IMG/VR virus record: IMGVR_UViG_3300036715_004471
Span: 382,542-446,541 of that record
Direction: 5' to 3' (one strand)
DNA length: 64,000 nt
In this document: in pieces, positions 7,009 to 50,756 of the stretch
Position numbering within the stretch: the first letter of the stretch is position 1
Layout of the letters: each line of letters starts with the position of its first letter
The notes under the pieces: generated by a model
What the model was told of the DNA's origin: nothing
Database searches by the model: none
Seen by the model: only the letters and a program-made list of their open reading frames with translations
Translations under genes and position numbers: made by a program

Positions 7009-7623
7009 TCATGCTAATCTGTTAAAGAGTGCTTCATTATCCTTACAATGTTCTTTCAACTTATCTAGCCAAGCTTGGCTTTTAATCTTGAACATAATAG
7101 GCATATTAGTTTTTTTATCATTAGTGCCCTTACACACTACACCCTCCATAGTCATACCAGGAAGAGTGGACTGCTTAACGGCATCAAACAATTCTACGCT
7201 TACTTGTCCTTCGTAAAGGACTCGTGGGATATCCAAATGACTAAACAATTTTAGAAATTCATCTGGTGTTAAGATTCCTTGTTTATATGGATTGACATCA
7301 ATTAAAGTAACATCCATTTTTTCTTCAAAGTTATGTGAGCCCGCAAAGGAGCTTGGTCCCCAATATTCAAAAAAGCACAAAGCATCAGACCACTTATTGT
7401 CTTTGAATACTTTAGAAAGACTTTCTGAATATTTCTCTTGAATTAAAGTAATGGCTCCATTAAAAGGACTTGTGCGATCAATCAATTCGGTACGAGAACC
7501 AAACTTATAAAAACCCTTTTTGGAGTTCCACTCGGCTCTCATATTAGAGCCATCTAGCTTATCAAAAGCATAGATGTAAACATCTTTTCTGACGTCTTTG
7601 GTAATAGACGGATACATTTTCAT
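7009..7623 (-). CDS. ATP-dependent RNA ligase-like nucleotidyltransferase domain
   Basis: Motif I DKLDGSN, FFEYWG, EGVVCK, FKIK. Confidence 0.75.
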   Translation of the reverse strand: MKMYPSITKDVRKDVYIYAFDKLDGSNMRAEWNSKKGFYKFGSRTELIDRTSPFNGAITLIQEKYSESLSKVFKDNKWSDALCFFEYWGPSSFAGSHNFEEKMDVTLIDVNPYKQGILTPDEFLKLFSHLDIPRVLYEGQVSVELFDAVKQSTLPGMTMEGVVCKGTNDKKTNMPIMFKIKSQAWLDKLKEHCKDNEALFNRLA

Positions 7624-8228
7624 AAAAATACTTTCAATGTATGAGGAATAAATCTAACCCATTTCGTATGATTATATTGTTTAGTTGGCTTATGTTCTTC
7701 ACAACAACACCATTCAGTAAACTCATCATAATAATATTTTGTATACAAAGCTTTGTTAGGACAATCTTTATCGAGATTACACAAACCATTCATATAGGCT
7801 TGATGATCGCCACCGGTATTTAACCAAATACTATATTCATAAGATTTTTGATCTCTGTCCCAGCCAACTTCTTTCACACAATCTCCATTGAGATTAAGGT
7901 TATAAACCTCTGGTTTTATCTTGCAAGATACGAATAATTTTCTCAAACATTCTTCGCAAAGAGAAAAAACATATGCATTCAGATCGAGTAGATGAATTGA
8001 ATCATATCCACCAATTACTTTGGCTTTATGTAAACCAAATGGTATTTGATCATTGTATCCTTCCGGATGACACATGCCGCCGCCGCACAAATTACATAAT
8101 ATGGTTAATGGATTTTGAACTTGAAGTGAATTTGCACAATGGGTACAAACATGTTTATTGCGAGTGTCTTCGCTCCAATGGTCACAACTTTTGCAAACAA
8201 CAAAATCTTCGATTACTTCATTCGACAT
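7620..8228 (-). CDS. Cys-rich hypothetical protein
   Basis: Multiple CxxC pairs. Confidence 0.65.
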   Translation of the reverse strand: MSNEVIEDFVVCKSCDHWSEDTRNKHVCTHCANSLQVQNPLTILCNLCGGGMCHPEGYNDQIPFGLHKAKVIGGYDSIHLLDLNAYVFSLCEECLRKLFVSCKIKPEVYNLNLNGDCVKEVGWDRDQKSYEYSIWLNTGGDHQAYMNGLCNLDKDCPNKALYTKYYYDEFTEWCCCEEHKPTKQYNHTKWVRFIPHTLKVFL

Positions 8229-8286
8229 ATAAAAGAAAATGCGAAGCTGTTGGAACAGCTTCGCATCAGTAGAATTATTGATTAAC

Positions 8287-8574
8287 TTACTTAATGATAC
8301 AGAGGACCTGATCTTCTCTCAAAAGAAAATTAGAAACACCATCAACTTTAACTTCGGTCAAGAAGTTTTTATTGAAAGCCACTCTGTCACCAACACTAAC
8401 TTCTAGTGGAATTGATTTGCCGCTGGCATCCAATCTTCCACTACCAACTGCCAGTACCGTGCCAGTTGTAACTTTTTCCTCAGCAGTCTGGGGAACAAAT
8501 AACCCGCCGGCGGTTTGTGTTACTGGCTCATCTTTTGAAACAACTACGAAATCTCTTAGAGGTTGAACTGTCAT
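8287..8574 (-). CDS. groES: co-chaperonin GroES
   Basis: QPLRDFVVV, TAGGLFVP, GTVLAVGSG, VGDRV, LLREDQVL. Confidence 0.95.
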   Translation of the reverse strand: MTVQPLRDFVVVSKDEPVTQTAGGLFVPQTAEEKVTTGTVLAVGSGRLDASGKSIPLEVSVGDRVAFNKNFLTEVKVDGVSNFLLREDQVLCIIK

Positions 8575-8598
8575 AATATCTCCTGTACCACAAATATA

Positions 8599-9123: not shown

Positions 9124-9813
9124 TTAAACCTCGAGATGAAAACAATCATTTACATTCAGTAATCTCCATCCTTCGGGACCGAAATACAATCTAGTCACCG
9201 AAGTATTATCAATTTGAACTTTCCAGGTGAAACCTCTGTCAAATCCAGTAACGTATTGAAGCAGACATTTAATAGTCATGCCATGGCTAAAACATCCAAT
9301 ATTCAACATTGGTAGTTTATTAGCTTTTCTATAGTTGGCTTGTTCAATCATCTTGGGATTATATAGAATTTCATTTTCTACCCAAGCGGAAGATCTGCGC
9401 TCTACCATAGTAAAAGATTCTCCGTTGGGCGGCAAAAATGCTTGATTCAAATAGTTCATTTTTGCTTTAACAGTATCGGTCATTGTAGCAGATCGACTCG
9501 CGCCGGTCCAATCTCCTGCATCATATTCACGAATGTCAGGGACTACAATAATATCTTGATGAATGTCTGCACAAGCTAGTTTAGCAGTTTCTAATGCCCT
9601 ATCATAGCTTGACGAATAAACATAATCGAACTTCTCTCCTCTTTTAAGGAGTCTAAGACCTAAACGTCGCGCTTGATCTTTACCCTTTTCGGTCAGTTTA
9701 ACATGAGCCGTCTGTCCCATGATGTCAGGGGTCGCATTCACCTCAGATTCGCCATGACGAATCAGAGAAAGAATAAATTCATTATCTTGAATCATTCTGA
9801 GTTGTCCTTCCAA
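9124..9813 (-). CDS. histidine phosphatase (phosphoglycerate mutase family)
   Basis: IRHGES, SS..RALETA, GES, SHG, N..HL. Confidence 0.9.
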   Translation of the reverse strand: MEGQLRMIQDNEFILSLIRHGESEVNATPDIMGQTAHVKLTEKGKDQARRLGLRLLKRGEKFDYVYSSSYDRALETAKLACADIHQDIIVVPDIREYDAGDWTGASRSATMTDTVKAKMNYLNQAFLPPNGESFTMVERRSSAWVENEILYNPKMIEQANYRKANKLPMLNIGCFSHGMTIKCLLQYVTGFDRGFTWKVQIDNTSVTRLYFGPEGWRLLNVNDCFHLEV

Positions 9814-10183
9814 TAGTTAAATGGAAACCGTATCTTGGCTCTTTTGAAAGTCCATAATTTTCCCTTAAGTTTAACAAATAGGGACATTGAACCTTAAGCC
9901 AATAATACTCTCCGTTATCTTGTACTCCCCCTTCATATTCAAATTCAATTATTTTGTGTTCGTCCATCCTCCATAAATTGTAATTGGGAATTCTTTCTCC
10001 CCTAATAACGGAAATATGAGCACCCCATACTGGTCGGGTTAATTTCCCCAACCAAGGAGTCTCACTATAGAATAAGCTTCTGTAATATCGTGATATCTCA
10101 TCATCACACATGATTACTAACCACTTGTTGCTCGACGACAGATGGGTGCGCGGCGAATATACCATCTTACCAATAGATTTCAT
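9782..10183 (-). CDS. 2H phosphoesterase family protein
   Basis: Two HxS/T motifs: AHISV and FHLTI. Confidence 0.75.
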   Translation of the reverse strand: MKSIGKMVYSPRTHLSSSNKWLVIMCDDEISRYYRSLFYSETPWLGKLTRPVWGAHISVIRGERIPNYNLWRMDEHKIIEFEYEGGVQDNGEYYWLKVQCPYLLNLRENYGLSKEPRYGFHLTIGRTTQNDSR

Positions 10184-10693: not shown

Positions 10694-10764
10694 AATTAAC
10701 TCTCTAATAGTTTATTGTTTTATCAATAAATTATATCTACCATTAGAGAAATTTTCAATATAAG

Positions 10765-10837
10765 CTCAGGAGATCCGATTCGGACGGATATTTCATAGAG
10801 TCGGAAACTATGCGACCTACCATTAGTCGACTCCTGA
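10765..10837 (-). pseudogene. degenerate tRNA (Gln-like body, 9-nt anticodon loop, no CCA)
   Basis: Cloverleaf folds by eye; loop TTTCCGACT; T-loop TCCGAAT. Confidence 0.6.
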
Positions 10838-10840
10838 ATG

Positions 10841-10914
10841 TGGTTGGGAAACTGAGACTCGAACTCAGATAAACGGATTCAGAGTCCGTTGTCCTGCCGT
10901 TGAACGATTTCCCA
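10841..10914 (-). tRNA. tRNA-Gln(CTG)
   Basis: Cloverleaf, loop CTCTGAA, CCA. Confidence 0.92.
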
Positions 10915-10958
10915 ATAACAGGGTAGGTCACCATTGCCTACCCTCATATATCAGACTA

Positions 10959-11315
10959 TTAGTTGATTGATACCACTACTGCGGCACCAACATCTGATAC
11001 GTGGGAGGCTCTATTATCCGTTAGATAACGAGATAATGTTTCCACCGGATTCTCTGGTAGAGGATTCTCTACAATGAATTTTTCTGCTAACTCTCTCAAA
11101 GCTACAGTTAAGTCCGGATTATGAACCGAACAAACTACTTCCTTCTCACCAGAAACCCAACGAACAATAGAAACGTAATACGTTTCACGTGCGCGAGATA
11201 ACCAAGCAACAGTTAGTCCTGGCGCAGTACCATCAGATTGGTACGCGAAGTTAATAGCCTTGGTGATCTTATCAATTAACGTTTGTGTGTCCATTTTACT
11301 TATCTCTCCATTCAA
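10959..11315 (-). CDS. hypothetical protein
   Basis: ORF coupled to tsf. Confidence 0.6.
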   Translation of the reverse strand: MNGEISKMDTQTLIDKITKAINFAYQSDGTAPGLTVAWLSRARETYYVSIVRWVSGEKEVVCSVHNPDLTVALRELAEKFIVENPLPENPVETLSRYLTDNRASHVSDVGAAVVVSIN

Positions 11316-12300
11316 AATTTGAATTATTTAAAACGCCTTTTTCAAAATTTGGATCTGGCGTAGCAGGAACACCTGACAACTTAGCAACTTCATCAGAGAA
11401 ATTGCCTTTAGTTTGCTGTTCTATTCCTTCACCAACTTGACAACGAATGAAATTCACAATCTCAATCTTGCCACCTAATTGAGCTGCATATTGTGTGTCA
11501 ATAAGTTGCTCTATACTTTTCTTAGGAACCACTACTGATTCCTGTTTAGTCAAACAAACCTCAGTATACCATTTATTAAGCTTGCCTTCAATAATTCTAG
11601 CCCATTGTACTTGAGGTTTTCCAAGCCCTTCTACTTGAGCTTGAAAAATATCTTTTTGTCGATTAAGCACATCTTCTGGTAACTTATCTGGTGATATTGC
11701 TATCGGATTCATTGCCACAATTTGCATTGCTAAATCGTAACCAATTTGTGCAAATGCTTCTGAATTAGCAATTTCTACAGATGGAGCTTTCAATGTAACT
11801 ATTGAAGCTAGTTTATCAGCAGGATGATGTACATATCCAAACACGCGACACGTGTCGTCGATGGGCTCCTCGATCCACCAACGATTGAATACGCATTTTT
11901 CTTTAACTTTAGCAGACAATTCTGTTTGTGCCGTAAGCGCCTCACCATTTGTTAATTTATCGAATGGTAATCCCACCACATGAACTGCGGCAATACTAAA
12001 CCACACTTCTTCCGCGAACCCTCTAAATTCCGGGCTTCTAGCTACAAAATCAGTTTCACAATTTACTTCTAACATCAAAACAGCTTTACTACCAACTGGT
12101 AATTGTACAGGTCCCGCCAATACAATACCTTCAGCGGCGATTTTACCCTCTCTACCAGAAACAATATTCTGTCCCTTGGTTTTGATAATATCAACGGCTT
12201 TTTGTAGATCATCGCCCGCCTCTTTCAAAGCATCATTACAATCTTTCATACCAGCTTGGGTAAGGGCGCGTAATTCTTTTAATAATTCTGATTTATTCAT
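11296..12300 (-). CDS. tsf: translation elongation factor Ts
   Basis: KELRALTQAGMKDC, AAEG, EVNCETDFVA, LAMQIVAMNP, IIEGKL, FIRCQVGEGI. Confidence 0.95.
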   Translation of the reverse strand: MNKSELLKELRALTQAGMKDCNDALKEAGDDLQKAVDIIKTKGQNIVSGREGKIAAEGIVLAGPVQLPVGSKAVLMLEVNCETDFVARSPEFRGFAEEVWFSIAAVHVVGLPFDKLTNGEALTAQTELSAKVKEKCVFNRWWIEEPIDDTCRVFGYVHHPADKLASIVTLKAPSVEIANSEAFAQIGYDLAMQIVAMNPIAISPDKLPEDVLNRQKDIFQAQVEGLGKPQVQWARIIEGKLNKWYTEVCLTKQESVVVPKKSIEQLIDTQYAAQLGGKIEIVNFIRCQVGEGIEQQTKGNFSDEVAKLSGVPATPDPNFEKGVLNNSNFEWRDK

Positions 12301-12316
12301 GACTTCACCTTAAATA

Positions 12317-12610
12317 CTACATCCATAATATGACTATATCTTTTACAAACCCAAACTCAGCCATTGGATTAGTTTTGACAATAAAACCATCTAATTCTAG
12401 CATAGCTTTTACTTTAATAAAGACTGTGTTTCTAATCTTTTTCTTATATAAATCATTATGATGGCTTGCACTCGGATAATGAAGACTGAATTGACCATTA
12501 ACTGCCGAGTTTCTACAACAATCTATAATATGTTTATAGAGCTCATATTCTTCGGTCTTATAAAAATTCATTCGTTCAGCTAATTCTTTAAATTCTTCAG
12601 CTTTATTCAT
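12317..12610 (-). CDS. hypothetical protein
   Basis: ORF in operon. Confidence 0.6.
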   Translation of the reverse strand: MNKAEEFKELAERMNFYKTEEYELYKHIIDCCRNSAVNGQFSLHYPSASHHNDLYKKKIRNTVFIKVKAMLELDGFIVKTNPMAEFGFVKDIVILWM

Positions 12611-12613
12611 AAT

Positions 12614-12997
12614 TTACCTAACTTCTAAATACCAGCGCATGTTGTTAACATAAAGCGAATGACGTAACGAATATTTATAAAGAGGATCATAAATTTTCTT
12701 AGATACAGGATCCCAAACCACTGCATGACCCGATTTTCTACCTGTTTTCCAAACAATAGATAGTATTGCAGCAGTTTTGATATCAGTTAATTTTTTAACT
12801 GGAGCCTTAACCGTTACTGACAATTTGATTTTGTTTAATAAACGTTTACAATCTTTCAGAAAAAATGATTTGTATTTAGAACCTTTTTTATGATTTGGAT
12901 AAGCTATTTTTATTATTTCATTATGCGGAATGTCTTTGATCATCGCCACACAAGTAGGGAAACAATCGCCGTAAAATCTTTGTCTTAATTTACGCAC
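12614..12997 (-). CDS. peptidase C39-like protein
   Basis: Q..DCFPTCVAM, GHAVVW, YDP. Confidence 0.6.
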   Translation of the reverse strand: MRKLRQRFYGDCFPTCVAMIKDIPHNEIIKIAYPNHKKGSKYKSFFLKDCKRLLNKIKLSVTVKAPVKKLTDIKTAAILSIVWKTGRKSGHAVVWDPVSKKIYDPLYKYSLRHSLYVNNMRWYLEVR

Positions 12998-13203
12998 TGA
13001 TATACTCCAATTGAGTAAAGAATTACAGCAGCAATGCTAACACTGCTTTAATAAAGCAATAACAACTAAAAATTAAAATAACAACAGACACCCAATGTCT
13101 GTTGTTTCTTTTTTCATATGATTTCTTTACTCTTGCAAAGAACAAAGAAGATAGAATTATCCAAAACCAAAATATCAATAGCATTTGAATCTCTAATCAA
13201 AAT

Positions 13204-13277
13204 TGGAGCGGGCGCCGGGAATCGAACCCGGATAGCTAGCTTGGAAGGCTAGAGCACAACCACTATGCCACGCCCGC
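13204..13277 (-). tRNA. tRNA-Gly(TCC)
   Basis: Cloverleaf, loop CTTCCAA, U73-CCA. Confidence 0.93.
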
Positions 13278-13309
13278 ATACCTGAACTTATATATCAGGT
13301 TATGCACAA

Positions 13310-13809
13310 TTATCCGATCCAAGATTCTATAAAAATTTTGGGCTCTCCTACATCAATACCAAATTCTTTTTCTAATTTGCTTTTCAATTCCAAAAGTTTT
13401 TCTTTATTCTGTTCGATCCAAGAAATAGGAACCACAGTATTGGAAACTACAACCCCGCCACATTTAATTGCTTCGGATTGAGGAAATTCCAAATAGAAAT
13501 TAATATCAGCAACATCTCCGGCGGCATCAAATGGGATAGAAATTTCACAATCAAACTTTTTGTGAAAGAAATCAGTTTCTTGCACTAATGCCCAAAGGTC
13601 TTCGTAAGTTTCGCCTTCGTAATCTACCAACAGGTAAAACCCGCCAACCTCATCCATTATCTTTACTGGCTTAAGTTTTTTCCACTCTTAGGATCAAAAC
13701 GATCTTCGTAATGAAATTTCTCTTCATGTAGAGAAGAATATGGTTTCATGACATCATCTTGATTTAAGGTATAACCAACTCTTAAATAAAAAGTATAATC
13801 AATTCCCAT
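13310..13809 (-). CDS. hypothetical protein split by an apparent 1-nt deletion in an A6 run (~13680)
   Basis: Upstream ORF MGIDYTFYLRVG..PKSGK joins 13310..13657 frame if one A is added. Confidence 0.55.
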
Positions 13810-14057
13810 ATTTATTCCGTCTGACAACCCAGACTTTCACAATAACCATTGATACAATCAACAGTTAAACATCCCGCCGCAACAATGCAGTCATTAGGCT
13901 GAATACATGTTACTCCGGGCTCAATCTTGCATCCAGTATTAGGTCCTTCCACCTTACAATCACTACTGCTACAATTAATCACAAAGAGCAGCAAAATGCC
14001 CAATATTAATTTATTCATTATTTTTCTTTCTAAATCTAAAATATTAATGACTGATAA

Positions 14058-14132
14058 TGGTAGGCGATAAGGGATTCGAACCCCTGACTTCCTGCGAGTC
14101 AAGCAAGCACTCTACCACTGAGTTAATCGCCC
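14058..14132 (-). tRNA. tRNA-Val(GAC)
   Basis: Cloverleaf, loop TTGACTC, CCA. Confidence 0.9.
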
Positions 14133-14156
14133 ATAAATTATTTACACTTTTCTAAT

Positions 14157-14230
14157 TGGTAGGACCTGATGGAATCGAACCATCGAGTTAGCCTTGTAAA
14201 AGCTACATTATACCATTTAATTAAGGTCCC
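14157..14230 (-). tRNA. tRNA-Val(TAC)
   Basis: Cloverleaf, loop TTTACAA, CCA. Confidence 0.88.
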
Positions 14231-14289
14231 AAAAGCCGGTCTCTCCCTACTTGTCACACCACTATGGTAAGGTGTCACCCTAGTTTAAT

Positions 14290-14364
14290 TGGTCGTCGGT
14301 GAGGGATTCGAACCCACGACTTACACGGTGTAAACGTGTCACTCTACCGCTGAGTTAACCGACG
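14290..14364 (-). tRNA. tRNA-Val(TAC)
   Basis: Cloverleaf, loop TTTACAC, CCA. Confidence 0.9.
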
Positions 14365-14367
14365 ATG

Positions 14368-14443
14368 TGGTCCCGGATGTGGGAGTCGAACCCACTAAAA
14401 ATCGCGTATGAAACGACCGCTCAATCCGATAAGCATATCCGGG
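14368..14443 (-). tRNA. tRNA-Met/Ile2(CAT)
   Basis: Cloverleaf, loop TTCATAC, CCA. Confidence 0.8.
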
Positions 14444-14538
14444 AAAGTACTGTATATATATCACATTATGTATGTCTGATATTTAATAATTCAATTATAT
14501 GATTTTTAAATCATATAATTACAAACCAAGGAGTTATA

Positions 14539-15480
14539 ATGCCTACTTTAAATCCGCCAAAATGTTTCAATTCAACTATGTCATCAAAACCTGGCACCGG
14601 ACCAGTACTAGTAAACAATGTTAACTATCCAGTAAATAGTATGTATACAAATAATACATATTTATGGGATGGCACTAATTGGTCAACAACATCTAGTAAT
14701 GTTATTGATGCATCCGGACCGCTTCCTACAAGACAAAATAGTTGTTCTTCTGAGTTTTTTGGTGCTTCTGGCACAAATCATAATACTGTAATGGTATTTG
14801 GTGGTCAAAGCAGCTCTTCTTTATTAAGAGACACATGGGTATTTGATGGGACTAGTTGGACAAACCCAACACAATCCGGGTCTCCTAGTGCAAGGTACTC
14901 AGCAGCTATGTCATGTGGTTTTTCCGCATTATCAAAAGTTTTGTTATTTGGTGGAAAAAATGAACATGATGTTTTGGGTGACACTTGGTTATGGGATGGA
15001 CATACTAATACATGGGCACAAAAAACACTTGACGTATCACCATCTGCCAGATATGGAGCCAAATTAGTGGGCGGAATTTCTGCTGGAAGAAACTCTATAT
15101 TATTTGGAGGCGCTAATAATTTTGAGCTTTTAAATGATACATTTAGATGGAATGATGCCGCAGAAACTTGGGTAAAATTAACCCCTACGCACTCACCATC
15201 AGCAAGATTTGACCATGTTATGGGAAAAGATGCCGCAAATAGTAACGTTATTGTATTATTTGGCGGATTAAATCAAGACTCTGTACTTTCAGATACATGG
15301 GTTTTTAATGGTACTGATTGGACACAACAGTCTCCCGCAAGTTCTCCATCTGCACGTTATGGCGCTCATATGAGTTATGATGTCACTTCAGGGGCATTAA
15401 TATTATTTGGTGGCACAAATGGATCCACAGTATTTAATGATACTTGGAAATGGACCGGCACAAATTGGGTTCAACTATAA
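14539..15480 (+). CDS. Kelch-repeat beta-propeller protein
   Basis: Repeated SPSAR....LFGG....DTW.WDG..W units. Confidence 0.9.
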   Translation: MPTLNPPKCFNSTMSSKPGTGPVLVNNVNYPVNSMYTNNTYLWDGTNWSTTSSNVIDASGPLPTRQNSCSSEFFGASGTNHNTVMVFGGQSSSSLLRDTWVFDGTSWTNPTQSGSPSARYSAAMSCGFSALSKVLLFGGKNEHDVLGDTWLWDGHTNTWAQKTLDVSPSARYGAKLVGGISAGRNSILFGGANNFELLNDTFRWNDAAETWVKLTPTHSPSARFDHVMGKDAANSNVIVLFGGLNQDSVLSDTWVFNGTDWTQQSPASSPSARYGAHMSYDVTSGALILFGGTNGSTVFNDTWKWTGTNWVQL

Positions 15481-15497
15481 TCTGATATAAGGCTCAT

Positions 15498-15532
15498 AAT
15501 ATGACCCGCATATTTTATATGCGGGTCATATT
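15498..15532. terminator. bidirectional intrinsic terminator
   Basis: Inverted repeat ATATGACCCGCATA/TATGCGGGTCATAT between convergent genes. Confidence 0.8.
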
Positions 15533-41563: not shown

Positions 41564-41648
41564 TGGCGGATCTGGAGAGACTCGAACTCTCGATGGGTTT
41601 CCCCGACTGGTTAAGAGCCAGCTGTTATTGCCACTAAACGACAGATCC
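41564..41648 (-). tRNA. tRNA with Lys anticodon (CTT) and long variable arm
   Basis: GCTGG-CTCTTAA-CCAGT, V-arm GGG-GAAA-CCC, G73-CCA. Confidence 0.82.
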
Positions 41649-41656
41649 ATTCTTAA

Positions 41657-41804: not shown

Positions 41805-41813
41805 AGAAGAAGC

Positions 41814-41889
41814 TGGTCGAGCATATTGGATTTGAACCACCCTACATCGCCCCAAACGACGTGTGCAACCAGGCTACACTTTATGCTCG
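41814..41889 (-). tRNA. tRNA-Pro(TGG)
   Basis: Loop TTTGGGG, CCA. Confidence 0.78.
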
Positions 41890-42236
41890 ATTAATTTTTC
41901 TTCATAATGCTCTATTCTGTGGCAATTTGCACACAGAACTTTACATTTAGAAATCTCATTCATAATCTTTTCTTTAGACTTACCACTTTGTACTAGATTA
42001 GTTACTTCTGTAAGTTTTTGTGTTGGATCTATGTGATGGAAATCTAAAACTCTCCAATCACTAATCTCACATTTGAGTAACTTCCTATACTCTATAAACC
42101 ATTCTCTTTTTTCTTTACGAATACGATATTTCGTGGCTTTATCTTTTTTCTTATAATCTTCTCTGTGCTTATTGTTTTCATACCATTGTCTCCAATAAGC
42201 TCGTCTTTCTTCAACGCTGTTAAATTTCTTAGCCAT
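41874..42236 (-). CDS. HNH endonuclease
   Basis: VLDFHHIDP..EISKCKVLCANCHR; stop inside tRNA-Pro. Confidence 0.85.
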   Translation of the reverse strand: MAKKFNSVEERRAYWRQWYENNKHREDYKKKDKATKYRIRKEKREWFIEYRKLLKCEISDWRVLDFHHIDPTQKLTEVTNLVQSGKSKEKIMNEISKCKVLCANCHRIEHYEEKLIEHKV

Positions 42237-42254
42237 GCTAAGAATATATCAGCT

Positions 42255-42333
42255 TGGTCGGGCATGCTGGATTTGAACCAGCAAAATCTCCTGTACCCAA
42301 AACAGGCGCGATACCAGATTACGCTAATGCCCG
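42255..42333 (-). tRNA. tRNA-Pro(TGG)
   Basis: Loop TTTGGGT, CCA. Confidence 0.88.
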
Positions 42334-42386
42334 ATCTATATTGTTTCATTCCCGCATCAAAAAGCGCAGAAACAATTAAACTGCCT

Positions 42387-42473
42387 TGGTCCCCCATAGT
42401 GGAATCGAACCACATAGCACATAGGCACTCGTTTTACAGACGAGGGATCCTCCCAGGGATCTAGTTACAGGGG
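42387..42473 (-). tRNA. tRNA-Tyr(GTA), atypical C1:G72
   Basis: CTCGT-CTGTAAA-ACGAG, CCA. Confidence 0.75.
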
Positions 42474-42562
42474 ATAATTTCAACTGATTGTGTGGCGCCC
42501 GACATTCAGTAGGAGCACATAATCGCCTGGTGTCCCTACTTATTCAATTGAAGTTAAACTTA

Positions 42563-42619
42563 GCTGACAAAAATTGATAAGTTTTTACAACCCAAATGTA
42601 AACCTATCGAGCATTCAGC
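42563..42619 (-). ncRNA. minimal Y-RNA-like module
   Basis: GCTG-AATGC-TCGATAGG-TTTACAT..CTTATC-AATTTTTGT-CAGC. Confidence 0.7.
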
Positions 42620-42695
42620 TGGAGTCGAAAGTAGGAATCGAACCTACTGTGACAGTTTTGCAGACTGTTCCTCAAAGCCATCGAGGACTTTCGAC
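42620..42695 (-). tRNA. tRNA-Cys(GCA)
   Basis: Loop CTGCAAA, U73-CCA. Confidence 0.85.
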
Positions 42696-42747
42696 TTATC
42701 AAGGCTCTCGCCTTGGTCCAACCACCGAAGTGAATTGGGGGATGTTA

Positions 42748-42809
42748 GACGACAAAAATTGAATAAGATGTTGTTTATCCTAAAATGTAATCCTATTCTA
42801 GCATTCGTC
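42748..42809 (-). ncRNA. minimal Y-RNA-like module
   Basis: GACG-AATGC-TAGAATAGG-ATTACAT..CTTATTC-AATTTTTGT-CGTC. Confidence 0.7.
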
Positions 42810-42810
42810 A

Positions 42811-42884
42811 TGGTTGGGATGTATGGATTCGAACCATAATAAGAAGATTCAAAGTCTTCTGTCCTGCCGTTGAACGACACCCCA
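42811..42884 (-). tRNA. tRNA-Gln(TTG)
   Basis: Loop CTTTGAA, CCA. Confidence 0.92.
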
Positions 42885-42888
42885 ATAA

Positions 42889-43329
42889 TTATCTACCCAA
42901 TCTCCACCAACCAAAATCTTTAGCAGTTTTTCTTCTGTGACAATTTGCGCATCTAACAACACATTTAGATATTTCTAAAGCTATTTTATCTAAGGATGCG
43001 CAATCATTAATCATACTGGAAATGCTGCATTCTTTATTTTCAAGATGATCAAAATCCAAAACAATCAAATCTTTTTCACCACAATCCACACAACCATTTT
43101 TTAGATGTGAAACAATAAAATCTTGTATTAAAGGCTTTAATGTTTCTTTTCTATTATAAATACGTTGTTTTACTTTTTCAGTATTAAGTAAGTAATGTTT
43201 CTTACCATTTTCTAAATTGCACAACTTACAAAGATTTTGTCTTCCATCTTTAGATAATTTCTTTTTGTTAAAATCATCTAGCGATTTTTTATCTTTACAG
43301 ATTGTACAAACTTTGAATTCTTCACTCAT
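42889..43329 (-). CDS. HNH endonuclease
   Basis: CVDCGE..VLDFDH..EISKCVVRCANCHR. Confidence 0.88.
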   Translation of the reverse strand: MSEEFKVCTICKDKKSLDDFNKKKLSKDGRQNLCKLCNLENGKKHYLLNTEKVKQRIYNRKETLKPLIQDFIVSHLKNGCVDCGEKDLIVLDFDHLENKECSISSMINDCASLDKIALEISKCVVRCANCHRRKTAKDFGWWRLGR

Positions 43330-43365
43330 AACTTTGATATCAAAGTATTAGTAGTTTTCAAAGTT

Positions 43366-43437
43366 TGGTTGCGACGGCAAGATTCGAACTTGCGGGGGCT
43401 GGCTTATGAGACCTGCTTGAATCCAATTCTCATCACA
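43366..43437 (-). tRNA. tRNA-Met(CAT), short D arm
   Basis: Loop CTCATAA, CCA. Confidence 0.7.
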
Positions 43438-43441
43438 ATAG

Positions 43442-43530
43442 TGGTTGCAACAGTAAGACATTACCACTTACGGTCTCCCCCAGATGAACGGGAGGCGGGA
43501 GGCGGGATATGTATTCTTCCCTATATTGCA
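43442..43530 (-). pseudogene. degenerate tRNA-Met-like
   Basis: TGCAATA/TGTTGCA-ACCA, TTCAT loop, CGCCTCC duplication, aberrant T-loop. Confidence 0.5.
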
Positions 43531-43608
43531 TGGTTGCGGGGGCTGGAGTCGAACCAACTATTACAAGGCTTATGAGACCTGTGTGATATTCCGTTTCACT
43601 CTCCCACA
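43531..43608 (-). tRNA. tRNA-Met(CAT)
   Basis: Loop CTCATAA, CCA. Confidence 0.85.
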
Positions 43609-43612
43609 ATAT

Positions 43613-43689
43613 TGGGGTGTCGTACGAGTTTCGATCTCGCCTAAGATTGATTCACAGTCAATCGGGGTCACCAGCTCCCTCACGACACC
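43613..43689 (-). tRNA. tRNA-His(GTG)
   Basis: G-1:C73, loop CTGTGAA, CCA. Confidence 0.85.
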
Positions 43690-43785
43690 ATAATATTTAA
43701 AAAAGTACTTCATGAACACCCGCAATTTATAACTGCTCAGTTTGTAACAAGATATCCTTGTTCACCACACCTTTTTTAAATACAG

Positions 43786-43853
43786 CAGGATGGGAGGGAA
43801 TCGAACCCTCTTCCAGAGGGTTGGAGGCTCTGTTGCGCCCTGCACTCCATCCT
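43786..43853 (-). tRNA. tRNA-Trp(CCA), short D arm, no encoded CCA
   Basis: Loop CTCCAAC, canonical T arm. Confidence 0.6.
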
Positions 43854-43908
43854 ATATCGTCTCTCCGATTGTCATGCCTAGATCGATTGATCGGCGGCAT
43901 TCCCTTGA

Positions 43909-43983
43909 TGGTGGGGCAGCTTGGACTTTAACCAAGGACCTCAACTCTTACTGAGTTGCGCTCTTTCGCTGAGCTAATGCCCC
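43909..43983 (-). tRNA. tRNA with aberrant anticodon loop (CAGTAAG); identity unclear
   Basis: Good acceptor and D arms, CCA; no U33; T-loop TTAAAGT. Confidence 0.5.
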
Positions 43984-43987
43984 ATTG

Positions 43988-44059
43988 CACCTCTAGTAGG
44001 ACTCGAACCTACAACATTCGGTTTAGAATACCGACACTCTTCCATTGAGTTATAGAGGC
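43988..44059 (-). tRNA. tRNA-Arg(TCT), no encoded CCA
   Basis: TCGGT-ATTCTAA-ACCGA. Confidence 0.75.
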
Positions 44060-44064: not shown

Positions 44065-44169
44065 GTATTGACGAATATTGAAGAAATTTTTTCCTGTCAC
44101 CGGACATCACGGAGTCGAACCGTCACGGATTGTTTCCTATACAATGTAATTCCCTCGAGCATTCAATAC
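44065..44169 (-). ncRNA. Y-RNA-like module with T-arm insert
   Basis: GTATTG-AATGC..ATTACAT..ACGG-TTCGACT-CCGT..AATATTCGT-CAATAC. Confidence 0.7.
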
Positions 44170-44258
44170 AAACTTTTTAAAATCTGTGTATCTACTATAT
44201 CATCTTATTGATATGTTGGAACGTTTTTTGTTTTCTTTCGTCGTCCCAGGTGACTCAT

Positions 44259-48537: not shown

Positions 48538-49153
48538 TCTCGATAATCGTTATAAATTTCTAATATACCCAATTGGTTAATAATTAAATCATGCCCCAGA
48601 ATTTCTGGCATATGAAATAAATCTTCCAATGAATCAATTTCTAATTCGTAAATCGGTGGCTTAGGTTCATTGCCATCATATTCCATTTCTGATGGTACAG
48701 CTAATATTCCCAATTTTTCTAGAATCTCTTTTGCGTCGCCCGAAGTGCTAGATACCAATATTTTCATATTATTTTCTTTCAAAACAACGTTTTGAGCCAT
48801 GTAATAACCAAGAACAGCACTCATTACAATCAAAACAATGAAGTGGTCCTATCAAATTTCCGGAACATAATGCTTTGATTATTTTCCACCACCTACCAGA
48901 AGATTCTAATACTTTCATAAAATCAACCTCCACACCAGCCACAGCCGCCAGGAATATAGCCACATTTTCTGCAAAGTGTTCTTTTACAATGTCCACAATA
49001 ACTATATGGTTCTTGAATTAAATCTTTTTTGCACGCAATGCATTTGAGATTTTTCCACCAATCATTATTTTCTGCCTTATTGTTTTTTAATCTTTGTAGT
49101 AAACTTGCTAATATTTTCACACTGAACTCCAAATAATTTTGAACCAGAAACAC

Positions 49154-49188
49154 GATTTGCCGGCAGGGAATAACCCTGCCGGCAAATC
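49154..49188 (-). terminator. strong hairpin after rsr
   Basis: GATTTGCCGGCAGGG/CCCTGCCGGCAAATC. Confidence 0.7.
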
Positions 49189-49193
49189 ATATA

Positions 49194-50756
49194 TCAGATT
49201 TGAACAGACTCAATGGTTGAGACCCATAGGTCTTTGTTGTTACCAAGTTCAAGGAACTTTGCAATTACATCAAAAACTTGATCACTAAAACCACCTACGT
49301 TAAGGATATTCTCCTTATCGTAAGCTTGAGTAGAGGTATTCGGAGTAAGATCAATACAAACAAGCTTTGCTTTCTTGTTACGAGCTTTGAACTCAGTCCA
49401 AGCTTTCATCGTAGCGGTACCACGACTTCTGCCTGAATCAACCCAAGACTCGTTATCGCTTACATAAATGACTAGATCGCCCATGGCTTTTCTACGATTC
49501 AACTCTTCCATTGGAAGCGAACAGTTAGTGCCACCTCCGCCAAATCCTGCTAGGATCTTGGCGTTAGTCATAATTGAATCCATTGGATTCAGCTTATGAG
49601 CATGAACTCTAGTATCGAATGGTAATACTTCTACATCAGAATTTCTGCGCATAATAGCTGCGGCAACCAGGGCTGCCACATCAATACAACGCATCTTGCT
49701 GGATACATTTCCACGATTTCCGGTGACCGGAGAATTCATGGATCCAGAAGTATCTACCATTACATAAACCTTTTTGTTTTCAAACTCTGGAATGTTCTCC
49801 AACGCATGCTCAGCAGCCTTTTGCAAAGCTACAGAAACCTTAGCAGGAACACTTGCATCCATATTCAAAAACGTAGTGAACAACTGGTACGGGAATACCT
49901 TTGCTCTCTTAACTTGCTCCTTATCCTCCAACTTGGCACAGATAAGCCCTAACAGATCACGATCTGCTAACACATTATGACGAGCAAATGTGTTAAGGTT
50001 CTGTCTAATCTGGTTCCAAGTTGCATTGACTGCAATCTTTTTCCAGTGTTCAGCAGTCAATGGTAAAGCCGTAAGCTTTTGGAAAGGTACATGCGGGATT
50101 TCTTTTGACATATCTTTCTTGAAGTCTTCAAACTGCTTAACTAGAGCACACAAGTCTTCCTTTGCATACTCCTTATCTAGCAAGTACCCAAATATAGCAG
50201 AACGTTGCTTATTGGTTGGCTTCGGATGAACCAACTTGATGATATCTTGCAATGACGGATCATTACCAACATCTGCCGCAAACAACTGCTCATCATTCAA
50301 AGATTCCAAATACTTTTGGATTAATCTTTTAGGGCGAGTACCTAAAGACTTACGTCCAGTAGCCCCTGAACGAATAACCTGCACGAAATTTCTCAACATC
50401 TTTGGAGAATCAACTACCTTATCAAAGATTTTGGACAAAAGCTCGGAGTCCTTTCCAGCAACTACCGCAGCCAAAACCGCAGGCATATCTTTCATTAAAC
50501 CCTCTTGACGAGAGTATACTGCCAAGCGAGCAACGTACTCAGCCGGCAACTTGTTAGCTAACTCTAACACTTTCTTAAGTTGATCTTCATCAGATACATA
50601 ATATGTTCCGTTAAAACAACCAGTCATAGCTAATTGAGCCAATGCGGCTTTGTCAGACAAACTATAAGCTTGTCCACCAGCATTGTTAACTACATTGGTC
50701 GGCTTTACAGCCTTTGAAGACACAAACTTGCTAGCAAATAATTTCTTTGATGACAT
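49194..50756 (-). CDS. rsr: Ro60/Rsr TROVE + vWA RNA-binding protein
   Basis: NNAGGQAY, LAQLAMTG..GTYY, MKDMP, HPKP, VFPYQL, DTSGSM, GGGTNC, VSDNESW, VGGFSD. Confidence 0.93.
   Translation of the reverse strand: MSSKKLFASKFVSSKAVKPTNVVNNAGGQAYSLSDKAALAQLAMTGCFNGTYYVSDEDQLKKVLELANKLPAEYVARLAVYSRQEGLMKDMPAVLAAVVAGKDSELLSKIFDKVVDSPKMLRNFVQVIRSGATGRKSLGTRPKRLIQKYLESLNDEQLFAADVGNDPSLQDIIKLVHPKPTNKQRSAIFGYLLDKEYAKEDLCALVKQFEDFKKDMSKEIPHVPFQKLTALPLTAEHWKKIAVNATWNQIRQNLNTFARHNVLADRDLLGLICAKLEDKEQVKRAKVFPYQLFTTFLNMDASVPAKVSVALQKAAEHALENIPEFENKKVYVMVDTSGSMNSPVTGNRGNVSSKMRCIDVAALVAAAIMRRNSDVEVLPFDTRVHAHKLNPMDSIMTNAKILAGFGGGGTNCSLPMEELNRRKAMGDLVIYVSDNESWVDSGRSRGTATMKAWTEFKARNKKAKLVCIDLTPNTSTQAYDKENILNVGGFSDQVFDVIAKFLELGNNKDLWVSTIESVQI

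What the first reader, a model, noticed from the sequence alone, without database searches (positions are those of the whole stretch)
7009..50756. Possible complete phage tRNA supply, maturation and repair kit
Seen in one window: ~42 tRNAs, RNase P RNA, an RNA ligase-like ORF (7009), two 2H phosphoesterase paralogs (9782 and 39484, the latter inside the array next to a Y module), histidine phosphatase, CYTH enzyme, EF-Ts and Rsr. A Pol-beta nucleotidyltransferase lies just upstream (933). Known: 2H enzymes act on 2',3'-cyclic phosphates, and Rsr/Y RNA is linked to RtcB repair in bacteria. Inference: a heal-and-seal system against host anticodon nucleases that uses 2H plus an ATP-dependent ligase rather than RtcB or Pnkp.
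Basis: partly seen in the sequence, partly recalled or inferred. Interest (0 to 1): 0.72.

Follow-up and report, generated by a model that had tools for sequence, protein, structure and literature searches.

The report
Megaphage tRNA, RNase P and RNA-repair arm
The window is the translation-support arm of a 446-kb uncultured phage, with about 40 tRNA genes, its own RNase P ribozyme gene, Ro60 with several Y-RNA modules and a small RNA end-repair gene cluster; the phage also encodes RtcB and Pnkp elsewhere, so the proposed "repair without RtcB or Pnkp" does not hold for this genome.

Summary
ARAGORN finds 38 same-strand tRNA genes and Rfam adds 2. There is a full-length type-A RNase P RNA, a 204-aa RNA-ligase-fold protein, two 133-aa 2H paralogs, a histidine phosphatase, EF-Ts, a Pol-beta nucleotidyltransferase and Ro60/Rsr. 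No CYTH enzyme was found.

The same 446.5-kb phage genome encodes RtcB, a T4-type Pnkp, a second kinase-phosphatase, RlaP, a CCA-adding-like enzyme and three more RNA ligases outside the window.

The 2H, histidine-phosphatase and mini-ligase genes do form a syntenic cluster. It is kept in most relatives and is missing as a whole from one. An auxiliary end-healing and sealing route that borrows the Pnkp kinase is therefore plausible but unproven. The general idea is already published for jumbo phages (Iyer et al. 2021).

Three things look new:
- The RNase P RNA is conserved across this phage clade with many compensatory changes, and no rnpA is present.
- At least six Y-RNA-like modules sit in the tRNA array. 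Five abut a tRNA end.
- The 2H and histidine-phosphatase genes overlap.

No expression or biochemical evidence exists.

The parts
10764..44059 (-). Same-strand array of about 40 tRNA genes for 17 amino acids. 36 of the 38 ARAGORN genes encode the 3'-CCA. The array is interspersed with small ORFs and HNH homing endonuclease genes.
   Evidence: ARAGORN; Rfam; CCA ends; HNH ORFs at 8599, 10187, 25415, 26087 and 30521.
29150..29496 (-). Bacterial type-A RNase P RNA gene inside the tRNA array. No rnpA protein gene is found in the genome.
   Evidence: RF00010 at 288 bits, model 1-367. No PF00825 match in the genome. Present in 5 of 7 Rsr-carrying relatives at 247-308 bits. 49 of 94 predicted pairs show compensatory changes among six phage copies, including the P4 helix. 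Only 4 listed differences in the RNA against many more in the flanking ORF in roughly 91%-identical contigs. 14 IMG/VR contigs carry this RNA type, 8 of them with 1-10 tRNA genes in the stretch fetched.
7009..7623 (-). Mini RNA ligase: 204 aa, a covalent nucleotidyltransferase domain only. Motifs: I KLDGSN, III FFEYWG, IV EGVVCK, V FKIK.
   Evidence: PF09414 at 32 bits; PHROG 548 'RNA ligase', E 1e-16. K22, D24, G25, E160 and G161 are invariant; K165, K179 and K181 are kept in at least 90% of rows. The AF2 model (pLDDT 66.6) is nearest to the RNA ligases Rnl3, Rnl1, Rnl5, REL1 and Trl1, ahead of DNA ligases. Homologs occur only in huge phages: XacN1, Lak and LR74x/LR75x records.
7620..8228 (-). 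Cys-rich 202-aa ORF of unknown function between Cpn10 and the ligase. It is present in some relatives and absent in others.
   Evidence: No Pfam or PHROG hit. A 203-aa ORF holds this position in L019/L020; in L021/L022 no ORF is called between Cpn10 and the ligase.
8287..8574 (-). Cpn10/GroES co-chaperonin, syntenic within the cluster.
   Evidence: PF00166, E 4e-24; same position in relatives.
9124..9795 (-). Histidine phosphatase (PGM branch) with the RHG and SHG catalytic motifs. Its likely ATG at 9795 overlaps the end of the 2H gene by 14 nt.
   Evidence: PF00300, E 1e-39. It is the only copy in the genome. Nearest solved relatives are CobC/alpha-ribazole phosphatases and PhoE. Gene overlap shown; a 7-nt overlap in relatives.
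9782..10183 (-). Mini 2H phosphoesterase, paralog a (133 aa), with HIS and HLT motifs.
   Evidence: PF22547 at 30 bits. H56, R107 and H121 are invariant in 55 diverse homologs. AF2 pLDDT 95. The top 38 Foldseek rows are all 2H enzymes, but weak at E >= 0.1. VIA-align gives Z 7.0 to CNPase, 6.2 to Acb1 and 6.0 to a LigT-type protein. The family has 781 clusters at 50% identity, and its matches in the public phage collection are mostly jumbo phages.
39484..39885 (-). Mini 2H phosphoesterase, paralog b (133 aa, 29% identical to a), inside the tRNA/Y-RNA array.
   Evidence: Second copies sit in the same relative position in G003, G005 and G006.
36945..37091 (-). Long YrlA-like Y RNA module: Ro-binding stem plus T-arm, acceptor-like stem and D-arm.
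   Evidence: Rfam YrlA at 25.7 bits, full model, below the gathering score of 69. Orthologous modules in relatives show covarying T and acceptor-like stems.
40435..40583 (-). Second long YrlA-like module. It ends 3 nt before the 5' end of tRNA-Asn.
   Evidence: Rfam YrlA at 16-24 bits; orthologs in L037 and L041; adjacency.
41389..41467 (-). Short Y-stem module that fills the spacer between two tRNA-Pro genes.
   Evidence: Covariance model R1 at 35 bits, E 3e-5; adjacency.
42560..42623 (-). Short Y-stem module starting at the CCA end of tRNA-Cys.
   Evidence: R1 at 63 bits, E 2e-11; not in the training set.
42745..42813 (-). Short Y-stem module starting at the CCA end of tRNA-Gln.
   Evidence: In the lower stem 4 of 5 pairs have compensatory changes and none is broken in 16 sequences.
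44065..44171 (-). Y-stem module with a 41-nt insert. It ends 6 nt before the first tRNA of the array (tRNA-Arg).
   Evidence: R1 at 29 bits, E 6e-4; adjacency.
49194..50756 (-). Ro60/Rsr ortholog (520 aa).
   Evidence: vWA_Ro60 E 1e-18 and TROVE E 2e-7; PHROG 850, E 2e-43; 19 related IMG/VR loci at 66-94% identity.
11296..12300 (-). Elongation factor Ts.
   Evidence: PF00889, E 7e-41; syntenic in relatives.
15532..16092 (-). Short class II aminoacyl-tRNA-synthetase-like protein (186 aa).
   Evidence: tRNA-synt_2, E 9e-6; PHROG 4806 'histidyl tRNA synthetase', E 1e-41.
933..1565 (-). Pol-beta-fold nucleotidyltransferase whose end overlaps the start of the downstream ADP-ribosylglycohydrolase gene (25-936). 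It does not qualify as RlaP.
   Evidence: PF01909/PF18765; PHROG 388. Its RlaP match is only 11.9 bits, whereas a true RlaP lies at C1:348439-349446.

Best explanation
The window is the translation-support and counter-defence arm of a roughly 446-kb megaphage from mat, sediment and freshwater metagenomes.

Shown:
- One long same-strand array of about 40 CCA-encoding tRNA genes.
- A clade-conserved type-A RNase P RNA without a phage rnpA gene.
- At least six Y-RNA-like modules, and Ro60/Rsr 5-12 kb upstream of them.
- EF-Ts.
- A syntenic cluster: 2H, histidine phosphatase, HNH, Cpn10, an optional ORF, then a nucleotidyltransferase-only RNA ligase.

Inferred mechanism:
1. The array is transcribed as long precursors.
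2. The phage ribozyme, borrowing the host C5 protein, adds RNase P capacity. It cuts at each tRNA 5' end and so also frees the 3' sides of the Y modules that abut tRNAs.
3. Rsr binds the conserved Y stem.
4. After a tRNA break, the 2H enzyme opens the 2',3'-cyclic phosphate and the translationally coupled histidine phosphatase removes the remaining 2'- or 3'-phosphate.
5. The 5'-OH is phosphorylated by the phage's T4-type Pnkp kinase, which is encoded outside the window.
6. The mini-ligase, or one of three other Rnl paralogs, seals the break.

This route works beside the phage's own RtcB and Pnkp, not instead of them.
For: Components.

Genome-wide repertoire:
- RtcB.
- Pnkp and a second kinase-phosphatase.
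- RlaP.
- A CCA-adding-like enzyme.
- Three more ligases.
- No Tpt1.

Cluster synteny:
- Kept in L019-L022 and in G001, G003, G005 and G006.
- All three genes are absent together from the 97%-complete G004.
- The 2H and phosphatase genes overlap.

Protein evidence:
- 2H: both catalytic histidines invariant, confident 2H fold.
- Ligase: motifs I, IV and V kept in at least 90% of rows (the catalytic lysine is invariant), and the fold is nearest to RNA ligases.

RNA evidence:
- RNase P RNA is conserved with covariation.
- The Y modules share a conserved motif with a covarying stem, are YrlA-like, and lie downstream of Rsr in 19 relatives.
- 5 of 6 window modules lie within 0-6 nt of a tRNA end, and 21 of 34 modules in relatives follow a CCA.

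Published framework: jumbo-phage RNA repair (PMC7824862) and phage YrlA (PMC4201824).
Against: - No expression or activity data. The one soil RNA run laid on the RNase P RNA matched only its conserved core, on short contigs that run on unlike it, so it is probably not this phage.
- The 2H fold does not discriminate RNA end-healing enzymes from Acb1-like signal nucleases.
- T4-type Pnkp can already heal cyclic-phosphate ends (established knowledge; PMC3592404 is listed), so the cassette would be redundant.
- The mini-ligase lacks any substrate-binding accessory domain, and its model is of only moderate confidence.
- Outside the clade the 2H and mini-ligase families rarely co-occur.
- The gene contexts of distant 2H homologs tell nothing.
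- The Y modules score below the Rfam YrlA gathering threshold and lie further than 4 kb from rsr.
Confidence: 0.5

Rival explanations
1. One reading: a self-contained heal-and-seal system built from 2H plus an ATP-dependent ligase, used by the phage in place of RtcB and Pnkp.
For: - Four relatives that carry the 2H, phosphatase and ligase cluster (G001, G003, G005, G006) have no detectable RtcB, including the 100%-complete G003.
- G004 has RtcB and lacks the whole cluster.
Against: - This genome has RtcB, a T4-type Pnkp and a second kinase-phosphatase.
- Every relative that is at least 62% complete has a T4-type PNKP.
- No 5'-kinase belongs to the cluster, and ATP-dependent ligases need a 5'-phosphate.
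Confidence: 0.05
2. The 2H paralogs, with the histidine phosphatase, are counter-defence enzymes. They would destroy nucleotide-derived immune signals or ADP-ribose derivatives (Acb1-like cleavage of cyclic oligonucleotides, or hydrolysis of ADP-ribose 1'',2''-cyclic phosphate) and would not act on RNA ends.
For: - Acb1 is a 2H enzyme and scores Z 6.2 against 7.0 for the best match.
- The same arm is rich in NAD/ADP-ribose counter-defence genes: NAMPT, two ADP-ribosylglycohydrolases and a microbial PARG.
- Relatives carry NadM-Nudix next to NAMPT.
- Phage G's homolog lies near a macro-domain gene.
- Iyer et al. raise the signal-clearing role for jumbo-phage 2H enzymes.
Against: - The conserved neighbours are an RNA ligase, EF-Ts and tRNA genes.
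- Paralog b sits among tRNA and Y-RNA genes, in relatives too.
- There is no sequence-level similarity to Acb1.
- No Tpt1 is present to generate Appr>p.
Confidence: 0.2
3. There is no functional unit. The genes are independent accessory genes that sit together because this genome arm collects host-derived and mobile cargo. Their synteny in relatives would reflect shared descent only.
For: - The arm is riddled with HNH and LAGLIDADG homing endonucleases.
- The cluster is interrupted by HNH, Cpn10 and an optional ORF.
- G002 has 2H and the ligase but no phosphatase.
- XacN1 keeps the ligase alone, next to unrelated genes.
Against: - The 2H and phosphatase genes overlap in all close relatives.
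- All three genes are lost together in G004.
- The biochemical order of the three activities is coherent.
Confidence: 0.2

Closest known systems
Jumbo-phage RNA repair and tRNA provisioning repertoire (Iyer, Anantharaman, Krishnan, Burroughs, Aravind 2021, PMC7824862)
   Same: The same logic and the same parts list: many tRNAs, RtcB and ATP-dependent RNA ligases, PNK-HAD, 2H phosphoesterases proposed to clear cyclic ends, a ROT/TROVE protein with a tRNA-like RNA partner, the RlaP nucleotidyltransferase and NAD+ salvage.
   Different: That survey mentions neither RNase P nor a histidine phosphatase as the linear phosphatase (0 occurrences each). Here the 2H gene overlaps a His_Phos_1 gene, and the ligase next to it is a 204-aa domain-only form.
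Phage T4 Pnkp plus Rnl1 repair of PrrC-cut tRNA-Lys (established knowledge)
   Same: Heal-and-seal of 2',3'>p and 5'-OH breaks by a phage. This genome has a T4-type Pnkp (kinase plus HAD_PNKP) and Rnl-family ligases.
   Different: The window cluster uses 2H plus a histidine phosphatase for the 3' end, has no kinase of its own, and its ligase is not Rnl1.
Salmonella rsr-yrlBA-rtcBA operon and bacterial or phage YrlA Y RNAs (Chen et al. 2014, PMC4201824; Hughes et al. 2020, PMC7790460)
   Same: Ro60 ortholog, Y RNAs with a tRNA-like domain, and RtcB in the same genome. YrlA had already been reported in 22 phages.
   Different: - The modules are multi-copy (at least 6) and embedded in a tRNA array 5-12 kb from rsr.
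- Most are bare Ro-binding hairpins flanked directly by tRNAs.
- All score below the Rfam gathering threshold.
- RtcB is present in only 2 of 8 clade genomes.
Xanthomonas phage XacN1 (Yoshikawa et al. 2018, PMC5852040)
   Same: The nearest cultured carrier of the mini-ligase (52% identity). It is a jumbo myovirus with 56 tRNA genes for all 20 amino acids, PNKP and a CCA-adding enzyme.
   Different: XacN1 has no RNase P RNA, no RtcB, no mini-2H and no His_Phos_1. Its ligase homolog sits among unrelated genes.
Fungal and plant tRNA ligase Trl1 (CPD 2H domain plus kinase plus ligase) with Tpt1
   Same: A 2H cyclic phosphodiesterase feeds an ATP-dependent ligase. Trl1 ligase domains are among the structural neighbours of the mini-ligase.
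   Different: The proteins are separate. There is no Tpt1/KptA in the genome. A histidine phosphatase is placed to remove the phosphate instead.
Bacterial type-A RNase P RNA (RF00010)
   Same: Full-length match far above the gathering score. The P4 helix and conserved regions are kept, with compensatory changes.
   Different: It is encoded by a phage inside its tRNA array, without rnpA. None was found in the cultured phages searched, and none is mentioned in the jumbo-phage papers searched. One megaphage study reports only tRNAs and a tmRNA from a full Rfam scan.

Membership tests
Bacterial RNase P RNA, class A (RF00010) | Full-length covariance-model match above the curated gathering score | tested here: met
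   288.2 bits against 100, model 1-367.
Bacterial RNase P RNA, class A (RF00010) | Helices, including P4, maintained by compensatory change among homologs | tested here: met
   Six phage copies: 49 of 94 predicted pairs have compensatory changes. The P4 columns 46-54/383-390 are all paired.
Bacterial RNase P RNA, class A (RF00010) | Partner protein subunit RnpA/C5 available | tested here: not met
   No PF00825 match in the phage genome. A host protein would have to serve, which is an inference.
Bacterial RNase P RNA, class A (RF00010) | Cleaves pre-tRNA 5' leaders | not testable with these tools
   Needs an in vitro assay.
YrlA-type bacterial Y RNA (RF02553) | Terminal stem with the conserved Ro-binding internal loop, supported by covariation | tested here: met
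   Invariant AAUGC, UUAC (within GAUUACAU) and the G-U that closes CAAUUUUUG(U). In the lower stem 4 of 5 pairs are compensatory and none is broken in 16 sequences. Aligned to the YrlA consensus.
YrlA-type bacterial Y RNA (RF02553) | tRNA-like domain (T-arm, acceptor-like stem, D-arm) inside the stem | tested here: inconclusive
   Present in 2 of 6 window modules (36945-37091 and 40435-40583). The other four are bare hairpins.
YrlA-type bacterial Y RNA (RF02553) | Score at or above the Rfam gathering threshold | tested here: not met
   25.7 and 16-24 bits against 69.
YrlA-type bacterial Y RNA (RF02553) | Encoded next to rsr (within 4 kb in Chen et al. 2014) | tested here: not met
   5.0-12.1 kb downstream of rsr on the same strand. 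The same layout holds in 19 relatives.
YrlA-type bacterial Y RNA (RF02553) | Binds Rsr | not testable with these tools
   The complex job was not folded.
2H phosphoesterase superfamily | Two HxT/S motifs | tested here: met
   HIS and HLT in both paralogs. H56 and H121 are invariant and T123 is kept in at least 90% of 55 homologs.
2H phosphoesterase superfamily | 2H fold | tested here: met
   AF2 pLDDT 95. The top 38 Foldseek rows are 2H enzymes, but at E >= 0.1. VIA-align Z 7.0 to CNPase.
2H phosphoesterase superfamily | Acts on RNA 2',3'-cyclic phosphate ends rather than on cyclic nucleotides or Appr>p | not testable with these tools
   CNPase, Acb1 and LigT score alike, Z 7.0, 6.2 and 6.0.
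ATP-dependent RNA ligase (PF09414 clan, covalent nucleotidyltransferases) | Motif I lysine (KxDGxN) with motifs III, IV and V | tested here: met
   KLDGSN, FFEYWG, EGVVCK and FKIK. K22, D24, G25, E160 and G161 are invariant; K165, K179 and K181 are kept in at least 90% of rows.
ATP-dependent RNA ligase (PF09414 clan, covalent nucleotidyltransferases) | Pfam match above the cut-off and a fold nearest to RNA ligases | tested here: met
   32.1 bits against 27. The top 36 Foldseek rows are RNA ligases, apart from an Aquifex protein annotated as a putative DNA ligase; the first T7 or T4 DNA ligase appears at rank 37. The model has pLDDT of only 66.6.
ATP-dependent RNA ligase (PF09414 clan, covalent nucleotidyltransferases) | Accessory substrate-binding domain that defines Rnl1, Rnl2, Rnl3 or Rnl5 | tested here: not met
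   204 aa, nucleotidyltransferase domain only. The matched chains are 233-610 residues long, with TM normalised to the target at most 0.46. It is therefore not assigned to Rnl1-5.
   RtcB at E 2e-93. Pnkp kinase plus HAD_PNKP at E 3e-49, and a second kinase plus PNK3P.
Trl1/Tpt1-type 2'-phosphate pathway | RNA 2'-phosphotransferase Tpt1/KptA present | tested here: not met
   No PF01885 match at E <= 0.1.
CYTH (triphosphate tunnel) enzyme | Match to PF01928 | tested here: not met
   No match in the six-frame genome search, while the control search matched in 11 of 14 genomes.
RlaP (RNA-ligase-associated Pol-beta nucleotidyltransferase) for ORF 933-1565 | Match to PF10127 above the cut-off | tested here: not met
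   11.9 bits, E 0.04, for the window ORF. A true RlaP (77 bits) lies at C1:348439-349446.

The most novel reading that the evidence does not exclude
A clade of megaphages carries its own catalytic RNase P RNA without the protein subunit. It would use this RNA to process a polycistronic array in which tRNAs alternate with Ro60-binding Y-RNA hairpins, so one ribozyme would mature both the phage tRNA pool and the ligands of the phage Rsr. This would be a virus-encoded RNase P ribozyme and a tRNA-punctuated way of making Y RNAs. I found neither described in the literature I could search.
Probability: 0.5. Interest if true: 0.75.

Novelty: new variant of a known kind. Interest (0 to 1): 0.6.

Why it matters
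It is already known that jumbo phages bring tRNAs and RNA-repair enzymes to withstand host attacks on translation. This locus adds three testable extensions.

1. **RNase P RNA.** A phage lineage has kept a full RNase P ribozyme gene under structural selection. That suggests 5' maturation of a 40-56-gene tRNA load can be limiting, or is targeted by hosts.
2. **Y RNA production.** Ro60 ligands can be made as tRNA-flanked modules released by tRNA-processing enzymes. That gives a simple system for studying what Rsr and Y RNA do during infection.
3. **A different 3'-end healing pair.** A 2H enzyme overlapping a histidine phosphatase would heal 3' ends with different chemistry from the HAD, metallophosphoesterase or Tpt1 routes. 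The same two domains are fused in animal Sts/UBASH3 proteins (my own knowledge, not tested here).

The finding also serves as a caution. A statement that a pathway is absent, made from one 64-kb window of a 446-kb genome, was wrong.

Tried and rejected
- **Near relatives among public phages.** Megablast of 6 kb around rsr against 50,697 phage records gave no match. Relatives had to be found by protein search.
- **PDB sequence searches.** Searches with the mini-ligase and with 2H gave only noise.
- **CYTH.** No match.
- **Archease or other known partners beside RtcB.** None by Pfam.
- **Tpt1.** None.
- **rnpA.** None.
- **Window nucleotidyltransferase as RlaP.** Rejected.
- **2H sub-family by structure.** Inconclusive; CNPase, Acb1 and LigT all score Z 6-7.
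- **Gene context of 2H homologs** in phage G, RaK2, Phosso and three metagenomic contigs. Uninformative, apart from a CCA-adding enzyme 1.6 kb away in RaK2 and a macro domain nearby in phage G.
- **LR745206.** Its 2H gene lies 11.5 kb from its Rsr gene, but the 28 kb around them holds no tRNA or YrlA. The proximity may be chance.
- **Expression evidence.** The 2025 runs X8, X9 and X11 (library type not on record) gave long, genome-like contigs of roughly 91%-identical relatives. The soil RNA run matched only the conserved core on short contigs that diverge beyond it.
- **Rsr with Y RNA complex prediction.** The job was not folded, so it is no evidence either way.
- **Provirus label.** The 'provirus' class that IMG/VR gives this record was not examined further.

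Full report
**What the sequence is.** The window is the last 64 kb of a single-contig IMG/VR virus record of 446,541 bp (G+C 0.387) that CheckV rates 100% complete. It has no near match among 50,697 deposited phage genomes. It belongs to a populous clade of uncultured megaphages. Hundreds of metagenomic proteins are 70-80% identical to the proteins queried, some of them on contigs of 335-492 kb. DNA of this or close relatives turns up in microbial-mat, sediment, lake and groundwater metagenomes. The nearest cultured carrier of one diagnostic gene is the Xanthomonas jumbo phage XacN1.

**Check of the observation.**
- tRNAs: ARAGORN finds 38 genes, all on the minus strand between 10764 and 44059. 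Rfam adds two. One ARAGORN call is doubtful. 36 of the 38 encode the 3'-CCA.
- The window covers 17 amino acids. Leu, Glu and Thr tRNAs lie elsewhere among the genome's 56 tRNA genes.
- RNase P RNA class A is at 29150-29496(-), 288 bits, full length.
- Pfam confirms:
  - the RNA-ligase ORF at 7009-7623,
  - the 2H ORF at 9782-10183,
  - the histidine phosphatase at 9124-9813,
  - EF-Ts at 11296-12300,
  - Ro60/Rsr at 49194-50756,
  - the Pol-beta nucleotidyltransferase at 933-1565.
- The second 2H ORF (39484-39885) is below the Pfam cut-off. It belongs to the same PHROG as the first and has both HxS/T motifs.
- No CYTH enzyme exists by Pfam anywhere in the genome.

**The central inference fails for this genome.** Six-frame family searches of the whole genome found the following, all outside the window:
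- RtcB at C1:8543-10075 (E 2e-93).
- A T4-type Pnkp at C1:342201-343136, with an AAA_33 kinase and a HAD_PNKP phosphatase (E 3e-49).
- A second kinase plus PNK3P protein at C1:344406-345338.
- A true RlaP at C1:348439-349446.
- A CCA-adding-like enzyme.
- Three more PF09414 ligases of 233, 333 and 408 aa.

The phage therefore has a conventional repair island at about 335-349 kb, plus RtcB. The order of RtcB, Rsr and RNase P RNA in relative G004 suggests that the contig ends adjoin. On that reading RtcB lies about 22 kb upstream of rsr on the same strand. This is an inference.

**What survives: a conserved three-enzyme cluster.**
- In four contigs whose 2H proteins are 72-74% identical to the window's, the order is EF-Ts, then 2H, histidine phosphatase, HNH, Cpn10, an optional ORF and the mini-ligase, with NadM-Nudix and NAMPT further on. 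The 2H and phosphatase genes overlap there. In the window they overlap by 14 nt.
- Among seven Rsr-carrying IMG/VR relatives, G001, G003, G005 and G006 keep all three genes in order within 3-5 kb. G002 keeps 2H and the ligase. G004 (97% complete) lacks all three.
- RtcB occurs only in this genome and in G004. T4-type PNKP occurs in every relative that is at least 62% complete.
- The cluster thus behaves as a unit, but never without a Pnkp kinase in the genome.
- Outside the clade the link dissolves. XacN1 has the ligase alone among unrelated genes. The ligase and 2H families share only 2 of the 20 ligase-positive phage records.

**The proteins.**
- Mini-ligase: 204 aa, a bare covalent nucleotidyltransferase domain. 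Motif I (KLDGSN) is invariant apart from its variable position. Motifs IV (EGVVCK) and V (FKIK) are kept in at least 90% of rows. Its AF2 model is of moderate confidence (pLDDT 66.6). The model matches RNA ligases of the Rnl3, Rnl1, Rnl5, REL1, Trl1 and Rnl2 types ahead of DNA ligases. It has none of the accessory domains that define those families, so I do not assign it to one. In public phage genomes it is confined to huge phages.
- 2H proteins: 133 aa each. They belong to a large family of 781 clusters at 50% identity, whose matches in the public phage collection are mostly jumbo phages. Both catalytic histidines and one arginine are invariant. The AF2 model is confident (pLDDT 95) and has a 2H fold. 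It is about equally distant from CNPase (Z 7.0), Acb1 (6.2) and LigT-type enzymes (6.0). Structure therefore cannot say whether the substrate is an RNA end or a signalling nucleotide.
- Histidine phosphatase: a regular PGM-branch enzyme with the RHG and SHG motifs, closest to CobC/PhoE-type phosphatases. No Tpt1 is present.

**RNase P RNA.**
- The gene is part of the phage. It is flanked by phage genes and tRNAs.
- It is present at 247-308 bits in 5 of 7 relatives but not in XacN1.
- A profile search found it on 14 IMG/VR contigs, 8 of them with 1-10 tRNA genes in the stretch fetched.
- Among six phage copies, 49 of 94 predicted pairs show compensatory changes and P4 stays paired.
- In contigs of roughly 91%-identical relatives, only 4 differences are listed within the RNA, against many more in the adjoining ORF.
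- No rnpA is encoded, so a host C5 protein would be needed. This is an inference.
- BLASTN against the phage collection found only host-like fragments.
- I found no mention of phage RNase P RNA in the jumbo-phage literature searched. One megaphage study that scanned with all Rfam models saw only tRNAs and a tmRNA.
- In five relatives a roughly 230-aa paralog of the mini-ligase (32% identity) lies 0.1-1.3 kb downstream of the RNase P RNA. The window lacks it.

**Y RNAs.**
- Rfam gives two sub-threshold but full-length YrlA alignments at 36945-37091 and 40435-40583. Both show the Ro-binding stem, a T-arm, an acceptor-like stem and a D-arm.
- The same stem motif (AAUGC, GAUUACAU, CAAUUUUUG) recurs downstream of rsr in most of the 19 relatives fetched. 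It occurs as short hairpins and as long modules.
- In an alignment of 16 short modules the lower stem has no broken pair, and 4 of its 5 pairs have compensatory changes.
- A covariance model built from that alignment finds further modules in the window at 42560-42623 (63 bits), 41389-41467 (35 bits) and 44065-44171 (29 bits).
- Five of the six modules lie within 0-6 nt of a tRNA 3'-CCA or a tRNA 5' end. 21 of 34 modules in relatives follow a CCA. This suggests release by tRNA-processing enzymes.
- Phage YrlA as such is known, reported in 22 phages. The multi-copy, tRNA-punctuated layout and the bare-hairpin form are what differ here.

**Mechanism and standing.**
- The composition, synteny and covariation above are shown.
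- The following are inferred: transcription of the array as precursors; the phage ribozyme working with host C5; Rsr binding the modules; and the order 2H, then histidine phosphatase, then Pnkp kinase, then ligase.
- The main rival reading is that the 2H pair clears immune signals or ADP-ribose derivatives. It is favoured by the NAD/ADP-ribose genes in the same arm: NAMPT, two ADP-ribosylglycohydrolases and a PARG.
- The overall concept is already published for jumbo phages.
- I rate the finding as a new variant of a known kind. The RNase P RNA and the Y-RNA layout are its most interesting parts.

Noticed in passing
genome C1:15230-15303 and C1:320811-320884 (outside the window): Two tRNA genes with anticodon CUA (amber suppressors; ARAGORN labels them Pyl). 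Part of this megaphage may read TAG as sense, as in Lak-type phages.
   Followed up: no
window 22999-23947 (-): An ADP-ribosylglycohydrolase gene is split into two adjacent ORFs. 23387-23947 matches profile positions 2-174 and 22999-23382 matches positions 197-287. This is a frameshift, a split gene or an insertion. An intact paralog lies at 25-936.
   Followed up: partly
window 25-3651 and 47707-48537: NAD+/ADP-ribose counter-defence set: ADP-ribosylglycohydrolase (25-936), whose start overlaps the end of the upstream Pol-beta nucleotidyltransferase gene; NAMPT (2263-3651); and a microbial-type PARG (47707-48537) two genes downstream of rsr. Relatives add NadM-Nudix next to NAMPT.
   Followed up: partly
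relatives G001, G003, G004, G005, G006 (for example L046:1889-2566): A roughly 230-aa paralog of the mini-ligase (32% identical) lies 0.1-1.3 kb downstream of the RNase P RNA in five relatives and is absent from the window genome. This may link the ligase family to tRNA processing.
   Followed up: partly
window 8599-9117, 10187-10693, 25415-25873, 26087-26560, 30521-31081, 53324-54013, 60226-61077: Six HNH and one LAGLIDADG homing-endonuclease-like ORFs are scattered through the arm, several directly beside tRNA genes or the 2H/phosphatase pair.
   Followed up: no
window 35019-35100, 35305-35389, 41564-41648, 41237-41307: Three unusually long tRNA genes of 82-85 nt (Ala-UGC, Lys-UUU, Lys-CUU) and one tRNA-like element with a two-base anticodon. 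They could carry insertions or be decoys. The Rfam tRNA-Sec hit at 42623-42696 is the tRNA-Cys(GCA) gene and sits exactly at the gathering score.
   Followed up: no
window 16345-17229 and 18112-18855 (-); 14539-15480 (+): Two R2K-clade ATP-grasp proteins flank an RNase HII gene, with a short class II aaRS-like ORF just downstream. A Kelch-repeat protein is encoded on the opposite strand. RNase HII and the Kelch protein are syntenic in relatives, and one R2K ATP-grasp gene is kept in L019 only.
   Followed up: no
window 52409-58078: Cluster of three DNA methyltransferase genes (a D12-class N6-adenine type, a C5-cytosine type and an N6/N4 type) just beyond rsr.
   Followed up: no
whole window compared with XacN1: XacN1 carries its tRNA genes in 66-kb direct terminal repeats (PMC5852040). 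Here the tRNA arm is the terminal 64 kb of the contig. Whether it is also a collapsed terminal repeat was not tested.
   Followed up: no
LR745206.1 229213-242535 (L106): In a distant 635-kb huge phage the 2H homolog lies 11.5 kb from its Rsr gene, but the 28 kb around them holds no tRNA or YrlA. The proximity may be chance.
   Followed up: yes
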